Part shown: positions 56,366 through 60,819 of the stretch, piece after piece | How positions within the stretch are numbered: the first letter of the stretch is position 1 | Layout of the letters: every line of letters begins with the position of its first letter | Source: Epithemia pelagica | Lineage: Eukaryota; Protista; Bacillariophyta | Direction of reading: 5' to 3' | NCBI GenBank assembly: GCA_946965045.2 | Contig: OX337228.1 | Coordinates: 3,596,001-3,660,000 of the forward strand | Length of the DNA: 64,000 nt | Program-made: the position numbers and the translations under genes | The notes under the pieces: generated by a model | Seen by the model: only the letters and a program-made list of their open reading frames with translations | What the model was told of the DNA's origin: nothing | Databases searched by the model: none

Positions 56366-58328
56366 ATGGACGTTGCAATGACAATGGAAATGCGGTTTGC
56401 CGCTGTGGTAAATGAACTGAACAGCATTTCGTCAACGCAGCTCTACATTCTCATTGTTATTGTCACTTGTCTGATCAGCACAATTCTTCTTGGAAGCGCT
56501 GAGCAACAACAACCAGTATCGGCAGGGGCACTGGAAATGACAGCCAGTGCTGCTGCCAACGAAGCAGCAGTAACCAAGACTAGTCTGCCGAAAGATAAAA
56601 ACAGTCCTCCGGAACCAAGGTGGTATATTTTCCGGATGTTCAACTATGCGATGCTTGTTGCATTTGCGGCCTCCGTTGCTTCCTTTTTCTGGAACTACGC
56701 GTCTTACACCGTTGATTCGGGTGTGTTGCTAAGGTTTCTTGTTGGTTGGTCTGTATGCCTCCTTTATTTTTTGGGATTCTTTGGAGTTTCCTTTGTCCAC
56801 GATGTTGTTGGTGCACCCCAGACCGACTCCCCGATGATTCAGCTCAACGCTGAAGAGATGGCCGCACGAGCAGTGTAAGTGTACCGTGTTCTCTTAGGTG
56901 ATGTTTTCTCCCCAGAAGGCAGAGGCTTATTTATCGGGATTTACTCTTGTTTCTTGTTTCAGGAAACCTCATATTGCGAAGAAGGTTGTGGTAGAGGCAC
57001 CGTCCCCTAAGGATGTTCCAGTGTGCAGTGACCCGTCATCATTCAACCAGACAAAGGCGATACAACCGCCCAGCCAACTTGAGGAGATGAATGACGCGCA
57101 AGTTGCCAGCCTGGTACTTGGCGGTCAAATGAAAGATCACGAGCTTGAAAAACGCTTGGATGCTCACCGTGCCGTTGCGGTTCGCCGTTTGGTGGTGCAA
57201 GAGAAGTTGGCCGCGGTTGGAAATGATGCATTTTCTCTGCAAGATTTGCCATCACAGCCAAGCCTCGACTACTCTCGAGTTCACGGTGCGAACTGTGAGA
57301 TTGTTGTGGGCTATGTGCCGATTCCAGTAGGTCTTGTTGGTCCCCTCCGGGTTAATGACATGTCAGTTTATGTGCCCATGGCAACTACTGAAGGCTGCTT
57401 GGTCGCTAGCACCAATCGAGGTTGCAAGGCCATTTCGGTGCTTGGAGCGAGCGCAATGATCGTCCGCGACGGAATCACACGGGCTCCGTGCGTGCGTTTA
57501 CCATCTGCCATGGAAGCTGCTCGTCTTAAGCTTTGGTGTGAGAACCCTGACAACTTTGCTCTTCTCAAGGCCGCTTTCGAGAAAACAACTTCTTTTGGCA
57601 AGCTCAAATCGTGCAGCCCAACTGTTGCTGGACGTAATGCTTACCTTCGATTGGTGTGTTTTTCTGGTGACGCCATGGGGATGAATATGGTATCCAAAGG
57701 ATCTTTGGCAGTTATTGAGTTGCTTAAGACCCAGTTCCCTCAACTTCAACTGGTTGCGCTTTCTGGTAACATGTGTACGGACAAGAAGGCCGCGGCCACC
57801 AACTGGCTTGAAGGACGAGGAAAGAGCGTAGTGGTGGAAGCAACCATTCCCAAGGAAGTCGTACAAAAGACGTTGAAAACAACCGTGAAAGCCATTGTTG
57901 AGACCAACATCAACAAGAACTTGATTGGCTCCGCCATGGCCGGGACAATTGGTGGTTTCAATGCTCACGCAGCAAATATTGTAACAGCAGTATTCCTTGC
58001 TACTGGACAAGATCCTGCCCAAAATGTTGAGAGTAGCAATTGCATTACTCTTTCGGAAGAAACAGACTCACATGACTTACACATGTCTGTCACCATGCCG
58101 AGTATCGAAGTCGGAACTGTCGGTGGAGGAACCACTCTTCCGGCTCAAGCCGCTTGTCTGCGGGCAATGGGTTGTCAAGGCGGAGATCGGGAGAATCCCG
58201 GTAAGAATGCTCAACGCCTGGCCCTTATCATCGCATCGGCAGTCATGGCTGGTGAACTCTCTCTCATTGCCGCCCTAGCCGCCAACACCCTTGTCCAAGC
58301 ACATATGACACACAACAGGAAAAAATAG
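56366..58328 (+). CDS. HMGR: HMG-CoA reductase (class I); intron 56875-56962
   Basis: GANCEIVVGY, PMATTEGCLVAS, GDAMGMNMVSKG, SGNMCTDKKAAA, EVGTVGGGT; N-terminal TM segments. Confidence 0.96.
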
Positions 58329-58852: not shown

Positions 58853-59638
58853 ATGACAACTCGAACAAGCGAAGCTCTGACTGGATTCCTTGTTGGTGCG
58901 GCTTGTAGCCTCTCCGCTGTTTGGATTTTGAACCGAACGAAGAAGTCGAGCAAACCAGCCTACGATGAAGATGATGAAGAACAGAGAATGAGGGTTGAGC
59001 TTAGTGAGGCGTACCGAATCACTCGAGAGTTCAACATGGACGAGCTCGTCTGGAATCACCTGTCGGTACTTCTTTCAGATGGCTCGTTTCTCATCACTCC
59101 TGGTAGTCGGATGTTCGATGATATCGGTCCAGAAGACCTGGTTAAGAGCTCGGGCAATATCACAGCGGACATTATCCATGATGCAGTGTATAAAACAAGG
59201 CCGGATGTAAAGGCAATTGTTCATTTGCACACTCCAGCAACTGTTGCGGTGTCGTGTCTGGAAATGGGATTTGTACCCTTAGCCCAGGAGGCGGCCCCCT
59301 TTGTTGGTCGCGTATCTCGTCATCCCTGGCATGGTGTGAGCAATGATGTTGAAGAGCAAGAAATTATTGGAAAGGCCGTGAAGGACCCAAATGTGAACAC
59401 ATTGCTCATGGAAAACCACGGATTCTGCACCTTTGGAAGAACTCTTGGAGAAGCCTGGGTATTGGCATATTACTTCGACAAGTCTTGTCAGACGCAGCTC
59501 AATTGTCTCCAGACAGGACAGAAAATCAACTATCCTAGCGAGACGGTGTTGTCGCACGCTGCCGAACAGTCTATTTTGCCCGATTTCCTACCTGGTAACT
59601 GCGAATGGGATGCCCTTCGACACATGTTGAGTCGGTAA
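58853..59638 (+). CDS. Class II aldolase/adducin-family metalloprotein (candidate DsyD-like decarboxylase)
   Basis: WNHLS, FLITPG, HDAVYKTRPDVKAIVHLHTP, LMENHGFCTFG; N-terminal hydrophobic helix. Confidence 0.88.
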   Translation: MTTRTSEALTGFLVGAACSLSAVWILNRTKKSSKPAYDEDDEEQRMRVELSEAYRITREFNMDELVWNHLSVLLSDGSFLITPGSRMFDDIGPEDLVKSSGNITADIIHDAVYKTRPDVKAIVHLHTPATVAVSCLEMGFVPLAQEAAPFVGRVSRHPWHGVSNDVEEQEIIGKAVKDPNVNTLLMENHGFCTFGRTLGEAWVLAYYFDKSCQTQLNCLQTGQKINYPSETVLSHAAEQSILPDFLPGNCEWDALRHMLSR

Positions 59639-59836
59639 AAAGTAGCAGAAAGTGAAATCACAGGAGCAGAAATGAAACATAAAATTCTAAACCATGAAAG
59701 CGGTAGAAAGATGAGCTAAAAGCAATTCAGGTTTAACAATTCATACATCCTTATTATGTAGAGCGTAATGCAACGCAAAGTCGAAGTAGATTCAACCTAG
59801 AAGAACGGCATCTCATCGGGCCGTAAAGATAGGAAC

Positions 59837-60819
59837 CTAATAAACACTACCATCCATGCGAGCAGTGAAGATTCCCCAAGCGAAGACTTTGTATTCCCTC
59901 TGGATTGTCACACGACTGGTCAGGGACGACATCCATTTGGCGAGGTACTCTTCGGAGCATCCCTCTGACATCATGGCATCACGGTGCTTATTGATTTGGT
60001 CAACCATAGCCTGAAAGTAGCATACAAGATGGGGACTGAAGTCGAGAAAAGACGCCTGCAAGAATCCTGCGTCCTTGAGCTCTGACAGATATTCTGTTGG
60101 GCGCGCCATTTTCGTCGTCGCATTCCTGTCCGTGAAGTCTTTCAAGACCTTCTCGTCGGCGCCTTCGGCACCCATAATGTCCGTGAAAACCAAAGCTCCA
60201 CCAGGCTTGAGTACACGAGCCAGTTCTTTCAGGATAGCGGGTTTGCTGGCGGCATGGCAAAGAACCTCGCACGAAATGACGTGAGTGAACATGTCGGTCC
60301 AGTCCTCTGGCAAACCGTCGTTGAAGTTCAAAAGCTTAACATCCACCAATTCTCCGACACCCAGCTTCGCTGCTTCCTCCAGGTTCATTCTGTTCTGTTC
60401 GGGGGAAATGTTCGCCCCCAAGACTTTGCATCCAAATCGTTTCGCGATTTCGTGCGAGATGCCGCCATGACCAGATCCCAAATCAAGTACGTAGCTATCT
60501 TTTGTCACAGGGAATGTCCAGTCCATAGAAGTTAACAGCCTTTCATTCGTAGCCTTAGAAGCTTCGTAGACTGTATCGCTCTCTTTTCGGAAGCAACCAT
60601 AATGAATGTCGAAGCCTCCACCACCCATGACGTACTTGTAGAAAACACGGGCATGTTCCTCGTCATCTACGCAAAAGAATGATACTCAGTTCAGTGCATT
60701 CAGACTACCGCTATTCCAACGACCAACTTTTACTTACATTGCTCCACGACTTTATCAGCAACCTCCGTCTCGGCGAACTGCTTGTCCTTGAAATCTCCTT
60801 TATCAGCTGTCGACGGCAT
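59837..60819 (-). CDS. SAM-dependent methyltransferase, SDMT/DsyG/DSYE-like (303 aa; intron 60737-60667)
   Basis: Spliced N-terminus VVEQYDEEHARVFYKYVMGGGGFDIHYG, VLDLGSGHGG, ISCEVLCH, VLKPGGALVFTD. Confidence 0.85.

What the first reader, a model, noticed from the sequence alone, without database searches (positions are those of the whole stretch)
58853..60819. Candidate eukaryotic 'split DsyGD' DMSP-synthesis gene pair: DSYE/DsyG-like methyltransferase tail-to-tail with a class II aldolase
Seen: two convergent genes whose stops are only ~198 bp apart. One is a SAM methyltransferase with the SDMT-family N-terminal signature (QYD..ARVFY..VMGGGGFDIHYG); the other is an adducin-type class II aldolase with intact metal ligands (HLH, NHG). 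Established, recalled from memory: the bacterial DMSP enzyme DsyGD (Gynuella sunshinyii) fuses an MTHB S-methyltransferase (DsyG) to a class II aldolase-fold DMSHB decarboxylase (DsyD). Algal DSYE proteins, including diatom ones, are single-domain DsyG relatives, and to my knowledge no algal DMSHB decarboxylase has been confirmed. Inference: this locus holds both halves as adjacent genes, and the aldolase may be the missing last step of algal DMSP synthesis, forming a two-gene metabolic cluster.
Basis: partly seen in the sequence, partly recalled or inferred. Interest (0 to 1): 0.9.

Follow-up and report, generated by a model that had tools for sequence, protein, structure and literature searches.

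The report
DSYE gene beside candidate DMSP decarboxylase
A diatom gene for a known step of making the climate-relevant sulfur compound DMSP sits tail-to-tail with a metal-enzyme gene that, in other diatoms, is fused to further pathway-like enzymes next to the same gene, making it a testable candidate for the still unidentified last step of algal DMSP synthesis.

Summary
An intact class II aldolase gene (58853-59638, +) and a two-exon methyltransferase gene (60819-59837, -) converge with 198 bp between their stops. Spliced RNA contigs confirm the 71-nt intron.

The methyltransferase is a clade-E DSYE, 81.6% identical to the assayed Nitzschia inconspicua enzyme.

DsyD of DsyGD is a PF04115 ureidoglycolate-lyase-like domain, not an aldolase fold, and the aldolase has no similarity to DsyGD.

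The functional idea gains independent support. The aldolase is 87% identical to the C-terminal domain of a roughly 1,200-aa protein: amino-acid-dehydrogenase-like domain, second methyltransferase, D-2-hydroxyacid dehydrogenase, aldolase. That gene lies next to DSYE in Nitzschia, Pseudo-nitzschia and several metagenomic diatoms, in both orientations. Here and in an Epithemia-like relative only the aldolase piece remains beside DSYE, under strong purifying selection.

Bacterial dsyGD is followed by a D-2-hydroxyacid dehydrogenase, so the aldolase occupies DsyD's slot as an analogue. Its nearest characterised structures include NovR and TqaM, iron oxygenases that oxidatively decarboxylate alpha-hydroxy acids.

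The function is untested. An earlier scan note on another piece of this genome (s1-248308) describes a methyltransferase-2-hydroxyacid dehydrogenase fusion, probably the other half.

The parts
58853..59638 (+). Standalone class II aldolase/adducin-type gene (261 aa, no intron); candidate DMSHB oxidative decarboxylase
   Evidence: ORF. PF00596 at E 8e-33. 87% identical to residues 994-1213 of the N. inconspicua 4-domain protein. AF2 model pLDDT 88. RNA contigs cover 58912-59351 and 59439-59737. pN 0.07 against pS 0.87 versus L002.
58868..58939 (+). N-terminal hydrophobic helix (residues 6-29) followed by basic residues. It is absent from the fused forms and is probably a membrane anchor acquired after gene fission.
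   Evidence: Helix 6-29 in the model at low pLDDT. The hydrophobic stretch is conserved in the standalone forms P0139, P0140 and P0148, whereas the fused forms have 2-hydroxyacid dehydrogenase sequence there.
58997..59500 (+). Aldolase_II domain (residues 49-216) with metal-site residues D106, H124, H126 and H189
   Evidence: Pfam match. Invariant or nearly invariant columns H109, Y113, R116, H124, H126, N188, G190. Fold matches at Z 26-28 to 3ocr, NovR, TqaM and pyruvic oxime dioxygenase.
59639..59836 (.). 198-nt space between the two stop codons, holding both 3' UTRs
   Evidence: Sequence. The aldolase RNA contig reaches 59737 and the methyltransferase RNA contig starts at 59757. No overlap was seen.
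59837..60666 (-). DSYE exon 2 (stop codon 59837-59839), encoding the SAM methyltransferase domain
   Evidence: Translation. PF08241/PF13847. 81.6% identical to assayed DSYE KAG7362955.1. Placed in clade E in the tree.
60667..60737 (-). 71-nt GT..AG intron of DSYE
   Evidence: Sequence. A joint 60666/60738 skipping 71 nt is seen in two RNA contigs.
60738..60819 (-). DSYE exon 1 (ATG at 60819; 27 codons plus 1 nt)
   Evidence: An RNA contig extends to 60830, into the 5' UTR.

Best explanation
The pair is a reduced version of a conserved diatom gene cluster for the methionine-transamination route to DMSP.

The - strand gene is DSYE, the SAM-dependent MTHB S-methyltransferase that makes DMSHB. This is shown by orthology to an assayed enzyme.

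The + strand gene is the detached C-terminal module of a multi-domain enzyme. In most DSYE-bearing pennate diatoms that enzyme is encoded right next to DSYE. It joins an amino-acid-dehydrogenase-like domain, a second methyltransferase (probably TpMMT-like, judged from the literature only), a D-2-hydroxyacid dehydrogenase (candidate MTOB reductase) and this aldolase-fold domain.

Inferred: the aldolase-fold protein binds a divalent metal, probably Fe(II), through H124, H126 and H189. It would use O2 to oxidatively decarboxylate the alpha-hydroxy acid DMSHB to DMSP + CO2, as NovR/CloR and TqaM do with other alpha-hydroxy acids. That would make it a non-homologous analogue of bacterial DsyD.

In this lineage the fusion was split. 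The aldolase kept its place at the 3' end of DSYE and gained a membrane-anchor-like N-terminus.
For: (1) DSYE identity. The methyltransferase is 81.6% identical over 299 aa to KAG7362955.1, which had MSM activity in Wang et al. 2024. It falls in a starred clade with that enzyme.

(2) The window aldolase is orthologous to the aldolase domain of the fusion. It is 87% identical and sits among the pennate 4-domain sequences in the tree.

(3) The fusion is one uninterrupted ORF of 1,219 codons. It also occurs as complete transcripts.

(4) DSYE is adjacent to the fusion or a piece of it in several arrangements:
- divergent: L001, L003, L004, L005, L014, L015;
- convergent with the full fusion, aldolase end next to the DSYE 3' end: L016, L017;
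- convergent with methyltransferase-2-hydroxyacid dehydrogenase only: L011-L013;
- convergent with aldolase only: the window and L002.

(5) Chroomonas CCMP1168, which has an assayed clade-C DSYE, expresses a 4-domain version with a Pfam-significant ELFV dehydrogenase domain.

(6) Direct methyltransferase-aldolase fusions exist (P0269).

(7) In Gynuella and Caldora the gene after dsyGD is a D-2-hydroxyacid dehydrogenase. The bacterial module is therefore methyltransferase + PF04115 + 2-hydroxyacid dehydrogenase, and the algal one is methyltransferase + 2-hydroxyacid dehydrogenase + PF00596.

(8) Fold neighbours: NovR Z 27.5, TqaM 26.2 and pyruvic oxime dioxygenase 26.1, against E. coli FucA 22.5 and APIP/MtnB 18.2. 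NovR/CloR use a 3-His iron site and O2 to decarboxylate a mandelate oxidatively. TqaM is a PF00596 oxidative decarboxylase.

(9) Both genes are transcribed and under strong purifying selection.

(10) No DDC enzyme is known for algae.
Against: - No biochemical data exist for any member of this aldolase clade.
- The closest sequence relatives are adducin head domains and uncharacterised bacterial 'aldolase class 2' proteins. Adducins keep the same His motifs without known catalysis, so intact ligands do not prove activity.
- Fold scores separate the oxygenases from the sugar-phosphate aldolases only modestly (Z 26-27.5 against 22.5-26).
- The cluster holds two methyltransferases, which is redundant if both methylate MTHB. 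The fusion could therefore serve a related but different product.
- The amino-acid-dehydrogenase-like domain of the diatom fusions has lost the catalytic Lys and the GxGxxG motif.
- DSYE of Pavlovales and Chrysophaeum has no such neighbour within 10 kb.
- A standalone aldolase 75% identical to this one lies beside a scramblase, with no DSYE on its short contig.
- The predicted Gynuella MTOB reductase showed no activity in the hands of Wang et al..
- The same genome also has DSYB, with another noted oxygenase candidate (unchecked).
Confidence: 0.42

Rival explanations
1. The aldolase-fold protein belongs to the DSYE-linked pathway but is not the decarboxylase. It could be the tetramerising scaffold of the multi-enzyme. 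It could supply MTOB in the manner of MtnB in methionine salvage. Or it could carry out another oxidation, such as DMSP to DMSOP.
For: Class II aldolases are tetramers, and adducin head domains keep the fold and the His motifs as structural modules. MtnB is a member of the same superfamily and its pathway ends in MTOB (established knowledge). The enzyme that oxidises DMSP to DMSOP is also unknown. The neighbourhood and fusion evidence supports only 'same pathway', not a specific step.
Against: The MtnB models score far below threshold: TIGR03328 gives 23 bits against a cut-off of 137. APIP/MtnB is the most distant fold match listed, at Z 18.2. The metal ligands and about 14 other positions are invariant across diatom, cryptophyte and Chromera sequences, and the protein is kept as a separate membrane-anchored gene under strong purifying selection. 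That pattern fits a catalyst better than a scaffold. The decarboxylation is the only pathway step left without a domain.
Confidence: 0.2
2. The adjacency here is a historical leftover. An ancestral convergent DSYE/fusion arrangement lost its upstream domains, and the aldolase and its parent fusion work in a different pathway. That pathway would be some other methylated hydroxy-acid or osmolyte metabolism unrelated to DMSP.
For: The fusion's methyltransferase is only 25-28% identical to DSYE and forms a separate clade. Li et al. 2022 state that large TpMMT-like multi-domain proteins are of unknown function. Related aldolase domains are also fused to TauD-type dioxygenases and to DUF1749, so the fold is used in several contexts. 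P0140 is not next to DSYE. Non-diatom DSYE loci lack the neighbour. The methyltransferases could be neighbours through an old tandem duplication.
Against: The linkage has survived with both orientations and with different retained pieces, across lineages whose DSYE identity drops to 67% and fusion identity to 44-49%. This is unusual for eukaryotic genes without shared function. The domain set matches the four chemical steps of the transamination route. Bacterial dsyGD is independently linked to the same 2-hydroxyacid dehydrogenase family.
Confidence: 0.3
3. One reading: the locus is a eukaryotic 'split DsyGD', with the aldolase homologous to the DsyD domain.
For: Only the methyltransferase half is homologous, at 40% identity to DsyG and E 2e-69.
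Against: DsyD is PF04115 according to the paper and according to my own scan of DsyGD from Gynuella and Caldora. The window aldolase carries only PF00596 and has no BLASTP similarity to DsyGD.
Confidence: 0.01

Closest known systems
DSYE clade E (N. inconspicua KAG7362955.1, F. cylindrus OEU16654.1; Wang et al. 2024, PMC11306096)
   Same: Single-domain SAM methyltransferase, 303 aa against 305-306 aa. 81.6% identical to the assayed Nitzschia enzyme, with the same N-terminal QYD..ARVFYKYVMGGGGFDIHYG signature. It falls in the same starred clade.
   Different: Not assayed. Its neighbour is a standalone aldolase rather than the 4-domain gene found beside DSYE in Nitzschia and Pseudo-nitzschia.
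DsyGD of Gynuella sunshinyii, with its adjacent predicted MTOB reductase
   Same: The methyltransferase half is homologous (40% identity). The logic matches: methyltransferase + decarboxylase + D-2-hydroxyacid dehydrogenase kept together.
   Different: The decarboxylase module is PF04115 (ureidoglycolate-lyase-like), unrelated to the PF00596 aldolase fold. The bacterial modules are arranged as methyltransferase-decarboxylase fusion plus a separate dehydrogenase. The algal ones are methyltransferase-dehydrogenase-aldolase fusion plus a separate DSYE.
NovR/CloR and TqaM (class II aldolase-fold non-heme iron oxygenases)
   Same: Same fold (Z 27.5 and 26.2; TM 0.75-0.76) and three conserved His at the metal site. 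[quoted passage not shown]
   Different: Only 19-24% sequence identity. Their substrates are aromatic or amino acids in antibiotic and fungal metabolite pathways. No evidence here for iron or O2 use.
Adducin head domain and bacterial 'putative aldolase class 2' proteins (3ocr, PA3430, NCBIfam PRK07044)
   Same: The closest relatives by sequence: adducin-1 at E 1.6e-27, 3ocr at 4e-21, PRK07044 at 1e-44 but below its cut-off. Same length and the same C-terminal helices.
   Different: Their functions are structural (adducin) or unknown. None is linked to methyltransferases or 2-hydroxyacid dehydrogenases.
'TpMMT-like' large multi-domain diatom proteins (T. oceanica EJK59074, F. solaris GAX25165), set aside by Li et al. 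2022 (PMC10989797)
   Same: Large diatom proteins with a methyltransferase domain of the TpMMT/DsyG superfamily plus extra domains, function unknown. This matches the fusion family whose aldolase domain is the orthologue of the window gene.
   Different: I could not retrieve those two accessions or TpMMT itself, so identity of the families is inferred. The paper does not name the extra domains or link them to DSYE.

Membership tests
DSYE (algal MTHB S-methyltransferase) | At least 40% identity and at least 70% coverage to a functionally ratified DSYE (the criterion used by Wang et al. 2024) | tested here: met
   81.6% identity over 299 of 303 aa to KAG7362955.1. 70.5% identity to the MMETSP1464 (Exanthemachrysis) DSYE.
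DSYE (algal MTHB S-methyltransferase) | Phylogenetic placement inside the DSYE clade, apart from the TpMMT-like and DsyG branches | tested here: met
   The window gene pairs with Epithemia clementina (100/98) inside a 96/97 clade with the assayed N. inconspicua enzyme. The DSYE clade has 100/100 support. The NCBIfam SDMT model scores 138 bits against a cut-off of 550.
DSYE (algal MTHB S-methyltransferase) | SAM-dependent methylation of MTHB to DMSHB | not testable with these tools
   Needs an enzyme assay.
DsyD (DMSHB decarboxylase domain of DsyGD) | PF04115 ureidoglycolate-lyase-like domain homologous to DsyGD residues of about 300-474 | tested here: not met
   The aldolase has PF00596 only. 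DsyGD has PF04115. BLASTP of the aldolase against DsyGD gives E 5.
Class II aldolase/adducin superfamily (PF00596) | Domain match above the Pfam gathering score, and the fold | tested here: met
   114 bits against a cut-off of 22.2. Z 22-28 to many solved members.
Class II aldolase/adducin superfamily (PF00596) | Metal-binding His triad plus an acidic residue (FucA H92, H94, H155, E73) | tested here: met
   H124, H126 and H189 are present, and D106 aligns with the acidic position. The residues are conserved in 26-29 of 29 sequences.
NovR/CloR/TqaM-type non-heme iron oxidative decarboxylases | Class II aldolase fold with a 3-His iron site | tested here: met
   Z 27.5 (NovR) and 26.2 (TqaM). The 3-His site is described in PMC13111500. 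The three His are present.
NovR/CloR/TqaM-type non-heme iron oxidative decarboxylases | Fe(II)- and O2-dependent oxidative decarboxylation of an alpha-hydroxy or alpha-keto acid | not testable with these tools
   Needs biochemistry. Sequence identity of only 19-24% does not allow transfer of function.
MtnB / APIP (methylthioribulose-1-phosphate dehydratase) | Score above the NCBIfam equivalog cut-off | tested here: not met
   TIGR03328 gives 23.4 bits against 137, and PRK09220 gives 19.8 against 226. APIP Z is 18.2, the lowest of the listed fold matches.
FucA / AraD sugar-phosphate aldolases and epimerases | Score above the NCBIfam equivalog cut-off | tested here: not met
   TIGR01086 gives 25 bits against 400. 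The AraD models give 16-38 bits against 251-369.
DSYE-linked multi-domain enzyme (dehydrogenase-like / methyltransferase / D-2-hydroxyacid dehydrogenase / aldolase) | Aldolase domain orthologous to the C-terminal domain of the fusion | tested here: met
   87% identity to N. inconspicua residues 994-1213. The tree places it among the pennate 4-domain proteins.
DSYE-linked multi-domain enzyme (dehydrogenase-like / methyltransferase / D-2-hydroxyacid dehydrogenase / aldolase) | Presence of the methyltransferase and 2-hydroxyacid dehydrogenase domains in the same gene | tested here: not met
   TBLASTN of the fusion finds only the aldolase part in the 64-kb window and in L002. The gene is standalone with a new N-terminus. 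An unchecked scan note places a methyltransferase-2-hydroxyacid dehydrogenase gene elsewhere in this genome.

The most novel reading that the evidence does not exclude
This class II aldolase-fold protein is the long-sought algal DMSHB oxidative decarboxylase. Together with DSYE and the linked methyltransferase / D-2-hydroxyacid dehydrogenase (/ amino-acid dehydrogenase) domains, it forms a eukaryotic gene cluster, and in most diatoms and a cryptophyte a single megaenzyme, that encodes the whole methionine-to-DMSP transamination pathway. Its decarboxylase would have been recruited independently of bacterial DsyD.
Probability: 0.4. Interest if true: 0.9.

Novelty: new variant of a known kind. 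Interest (0 to 1): 0.78.

Why it matters
[quoted passage not shown] In algae, however, only the methyltransferase step (DSYB, DSYE, TpMMT) has an identified gene. The MTOB reductase and the DMSHB decarboxylase are unknown, and bacterial DsyD has no functional algal counterpart.

The comparative evidence here names concrete, clonable candidates for both missing steps and shows that they travel with DSYE. If confirmed, this would complete the algal pathway. It would give better marker genes for DMSP production in ocean meta-omics, where multi-domain 'TpMMT-like' proteins are currently discarded. It would add a new reaction to the small group of aldolase-fold iron oxygenases. It would also provide a rare example of a conserved metabolic gene cluster and megaenzyme in diatoms, with a natural fission series (4-domain, 3-domain, 2-domain and single-domain forms) useful for dissecting function.

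Tried and rejected
- 'Split DsyGD' homology: rejected.
- N-methyltransferase (SDMT/GSDMT) identity of the methyltransferase: rejected. The NCBIfam SDMT model scores 138 bits against a cut-off of 550, while identity to an assayed DSYE is 81.6%.
- Aldolase as part of a longer intron-split fusion in the window: rejected. No other fusion piece lies in the 64 kb. Only 525 nt separate it from the HMG-CoA reductase stop. The Met-initiated hydrophobic N-terminus is conserved in four standalone homologues. No RNA coverage is seen upstream of 58912.
- Verifying that the fusion methyltransferase domain is 'TpMMT-like' by sequence: failed. TpMMT (Tp23128) is not among the retrievable proteins or the supplementary texts. 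The best 'single-domain' hit, P0275, may be a truncated gene call, because its close relative in L020 is the first exon of a 3-domain gene.
- Looking for the fusion or aldolase near DSYE of Pavlovales and Chrysophaeum: none within 10 kb.
- Looking for DSYE beside the standalone aldolase P0140: a scramblase lies there instead.
- The N-terminal domain of the diatom fusion against PDB by sequence: nothing. Its dehydrogenase nature rests on Pfam hits in Chroomonas and P0226 and on alignment A2.
- ESM Atlas search with the aldolase: only generic bacterial adducin-type clusters.
- The Skeletonema salinity paper's supplement: no gene identifier for its 'TpMMT homolog'.
- Earlier-findings search by sequence: blank.
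Full report
**1. What is in the window.**

The + strand ORF 58853-59638 encodes a 261-aa protein. Its only Pfam family is PF00596, class II aldolase/adducin (E 8e-33).

On the - strand, the methyltransferase starts at the ATG at 60819. Exon 1 runs to 60738, a 71-nt GTAAGT...TAG intron follows (60737-60667), and exon 2 runs from 60666 to the stop at 59837.

The two stops are 198 nt apart.

Public RNA contigs laid on the region support both gene models:
- Two spliced contigs join 60666 to 60738 exactly.
- Near-identical poly(A)-RNA contigs cover the aldolase through 59737.
- A metatranscriptome contig covers the methyltransferase 3' end from 59757.

The flanking genes are an HMG-CoA reductase (56898-58328) and a chromodomain helicase (from 61146). 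Neither is related to the pair.

**2. The methyltransferase is DSYE.**

The best named relatives are diatom proteins. The 90% cluster of the second hit contains Epithemia clementina KAL7580212.1. The cluster of the Nitzschia inconspicua hit contains KAG7362955.1. That protein is one of the two clade-E DSYE enzymes shown by Wang et al. 2024 to methylate MTHB.

Identities of the full spliced protein:

| Compared with | Identity |
|---|---|
| KAG7362955.1 (assayed) | 81.6% |
| Epithemia protein | 89% |
| MMETSP1464 clade-D enzyme | 70.5% |
| DsyG domain of G. sunshinyii DsyGD | 40% |

In a maximum-likelihood tree it pairs with Epithemia (100/98). That pair sits inside a 96/97 clade with the assayed Nitzschia enzyme and Pseudo-nitzschia. 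The clade is separate from DsyG and from the methyltransferase domains discussed below.

The NCBIfam sarcosine/dimethylglycine N-methyltransferase model scores 138 bits against a cut-off of 550. The "sarcosine/dimethylglycine" names given by some sources are therefore family-level only.

**3. The "split DsyGD" premise is wrong.**

[quoted passage not shown] They also report that the nearest algal single-domain DsyD-like proteins lacked activity.

I retrieved DsyGD itself (AJQ93410.1) and scanned it. It has PF08241 at residues 76-175 and PF04115 at 302-474, with no PF00596. The Caldora DsyGD gives the same result. BLASTP of the window aldolase against DsyGD gives nothing (E 5). The aldolase is not a DsyD homologue.

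**4. What the aldolase is related to.**

Several close homologues (80-89% identical) carry a D-2-hydroxyacid dehydrogenase domain in front of the aldolase.

Next to the assayed N. inconspicua DSYE gene lies one uninterrupted ORF of 1,219 codons (L001 4831-8487, - strand). Its parts are:
- an N-terminal region of about 440 aa;
- a SAM methyltransferase domain;
- a D-2-hydroxyacid dehydrogenase (PF00389/PF02826);
- a C-terminal PF00596 domain.

Residues 994-1213 of that protein are 87% identical to the window aldolase from residue 42 onward.

The family is widespread in Bacillariaceae and occurs as complete MMETSP transcripts. Variants:
- Three-domain versions (methyltransferase - 2-hydroxyacid dehydrogenase - aldolase) occur in Skeletonema, Cylindrotheca and Chromera.
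- Two-domain methyltransferase-2-hydroxyacid dehydrogenase, 2-hydroxyacid dehydrogenase-aldolase and methyltransferase-aldolase versions also exist. Some apparent splits are introns.

In Chroomonas CCMP1168, a cryptophyte with an assayed clade-C DSYE, the N-terminal region is a Pfam-significant Glu/Leu/Phe/Val dehydrogenase domain with intact GGCK, GxGxxG and GAAN motifs. The diatom versions have lost these motifs.

The fusion methyltransferase domain is only 25-28% identical to DSYE and forms its own clade. Li et al. 2022 mention large "TpMMT-like" diatom proteins with extra domains and unknown function, which they set aside. These are probably this family, but I could not verify that by sequence.

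**5. Linkage with DSYE.**

Fetched loci show DSYE next to the fusion or a piece of it in four arrangements:

| Arrangement | Loci |
|---|---|
| Divergent, with the 4-domain gene | Two N. inconspicua copies (L001, L003); Pseudo-nitzschia multistriata (L004, where the annotated 621-aa model is shorter than the continuous ORF); L005; L014; L015 |
| Convergent, with the 4-domain gene, so the aldolase end faces the DSYE 3' end | L016, L017 |
| Convergent, with a methyltransferase-2-hydroxyacid dehydrogenase gene lacking the aldolase | L011-L013 |
| Convergent, with the aldolase alone | Window; L002 (an Epithemia-like genome) |

The window arrangement is what remains if the upstream domains are removed from the L016-type arrangement. 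An unchecked scan note reports a methyltransferase-2-hydroxyacid dehydrogenase fusion on another piece of this genome (s1-248308), which would be the other half.

Between the window and L002, synonymous sites are saturated (pS 0.87 and 0.73). Non-synonymous differences are 0.07 (aldolase domain) and 0.05 (DSYE). The helicase on the DSYE side is syntenic, but the reductase on the aldolase side is not.

The standalone forms share a hydrophobic N-terminal helix followed by basic residues, which replaces the dehydrogenase sequence. This is probably a membrane anchor with the enzyme facing the cytosol (inference).

Limits of the linkage:
- DSYE of Pavlovales and Chrysophaeum has no such neighbour within 10 kb.
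- The standalone aldolase P0140 lies beside a scramblase.

**6. Parallel with bacteria.**

In a Gynuella MAG (DsyGD 94% identical) and in the cyanobacterium Caldora, the gene immediately after dsyGD is a D-2-hydroxyacid dehydrogenase (PF00389 + PF02826). It is 28-37% identical to the algal domains. This is the "predicted MTOB reductase" of Wang et al., although it was inactive in their hands.

The bacterial set is therefore methyltransferase + PF04115 + 2-hydroxyacid dehydrogenase. The algal set is methyltransferase + 2-hydroxyacid dehydrogenase + PF00596, plus DSYE. The aldolase fold occupies the position of DsyD, as an analogue and not a homologue.

**7. Could an aldolase fold do the chemistry?**

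DMSHB to DMSP is an oxidative decarboxylation of an alpha-hydroxy acid.

The AlphaFold model of the window protein is confident (pLDDT 88, pTM 0.82). Its best matches to solved structures:

| Structure | Z |
|---|---|
| Uncharacterised Pseudomonas protein 3ocr | 27.7 |
| NovR | 27.5 |
| TqaM | 26.2 |
| Pyruvic oxime dioxygenase | 26.1 |
| Adducin | 23.9 |
| E. coli FucA | about 22.5 |
| APIP/MtnB | 18.2 |

CloR and NovR are also among the Swiss-Prot model matches.

NovR and CloR have a 3-His iron site and use O2 to convert a mandelate to the benzoate one carbon shorter. TqaM is a PF00596 enzyme that performs an oxidative decarboxylation, and it has been crystallised with D-3-phenyllactate.

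The window protein keeps H124, H126, H189 and the acidic D106. These and about ten other positions are invariant or nearly so across diatom, cryptophyte and Chromera sequences.

Caveats: adducins keep the same His motifs, and the margin over sugar-phosphate aldolases is modest. The fold evidence shows feasibility, not function.

**8. Verdict.**

- Shown: the DSYE orthology, the expressed convergent pair, the orthology of the aldolase to the fusion domain, and the recurrent DSYE linkage.
- Inferred: the cluster serves the transamination route to DMSP, the 2-hydroxyacid dehydrogenase is the MTOB reductase, and the aldolase-fold protein is the DMSHB decarboxylase. I give the last of these about 0.4.
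- Main doubts: two methyltransferases in one cluster, no biochemistry for any clade member, and the possibility of a related but different product.

No paper in the searchable library links DMSHB or DMSP to a class II aldolase or to these multi-domain proteins beyond the remark in Li et al.. Recent papers still treat the step as unknown outside DsyGD.

Noticed in passing
L001:4831-8487 (-) and L003:4856-8512 (-): N. inconspicua encodes a 1,219-aa, intron-free four-domain protein (dehydrogenase-like / methyltransferase / D-2-hydroxyacid dehydrogenase / class II aldolase), annotated 'glyoxylate reductase'. It lies head-to-head with the assayed DSYE gene. The Skeletonema three-domain homologue is annotated 'formate dehydrogenase'.
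   Followed up: yes
L004:4911-8516 (-): The Pseudo-nitzschia multistriata gene model beside DSYE is 621 aa. The reading frame, however, is continuous and homologous to the full 1,219-aa Nitzschia protein (78% identity in one HSP), so the annotation looks truncated.
   Followed up: partly
alignment A2 (N-terminal domains of P0230, P0226, P0183 and others): The Chroomonas N-terminal domain keeps the Glu/Leu/Phe/Val dehydrogenase motifs (GGCK, GLGNVGG, GAAN). All diatom versions have lost the catalytic Lys and the dinucleotide-binding glycines, which suggests a pseudo-enzyme domain retained in the fusion.
   Followed up: partly
P0327 (763 aa), P0346 (1121 aa), P0278 (505 aa): More distant members of the same aldolase group are fused to TauD/TfdA-type dioxygenases or to DUF1749 hydrolase-like domains. 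These are other uncharacterised two-enzyme combinations.
   Followed up: no
P0269 (545 aa): A direct methyltransferase-aldolase fusion without the dehydrogenase. It groups with the Chromera protein in both trees, and its architecture is analogous to DsyG-DsyD.
   Followed up: partly
L020:3-2810 (+): The stop codon of the methyltransferase ORF is part of a GTAAGT, and the 2-hydroxyacid dehydrogenase-aldolase ORF follows 289 nt later on the same strand. This is probably one three-domain gene with an intron, so some 'single-domain' methyltransferase calls in metagenomes are truncated.
   Followed up: partly
window:56366-58328 (+): HMG-CoA reductase. The catalytic domain ORF is 56898-58328 (PF00368, E 5e-132). 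An upstream ORF at 56366-56878 with hydrophobic stretches may be its membrane exon. It is not syntenic in L002.
   Followed up: no
window:61146-63065 (+): A long ORF for a chromodomain/SNF2-type helicase upstream of DSYE. It is 59% identical to the gene in the same position in L002, so helicase-DSYE-aldolase is the conserved block.
   Followed up: partly
L024:7413-8447 and L025:7529-8476: In Gynuella and Caldora the gene directly after dsyGD is a D-2-hydroxyacid dehydrogenase. In Gynuella an MFS transporter follows on the opposite strand.
   Followed up: partly
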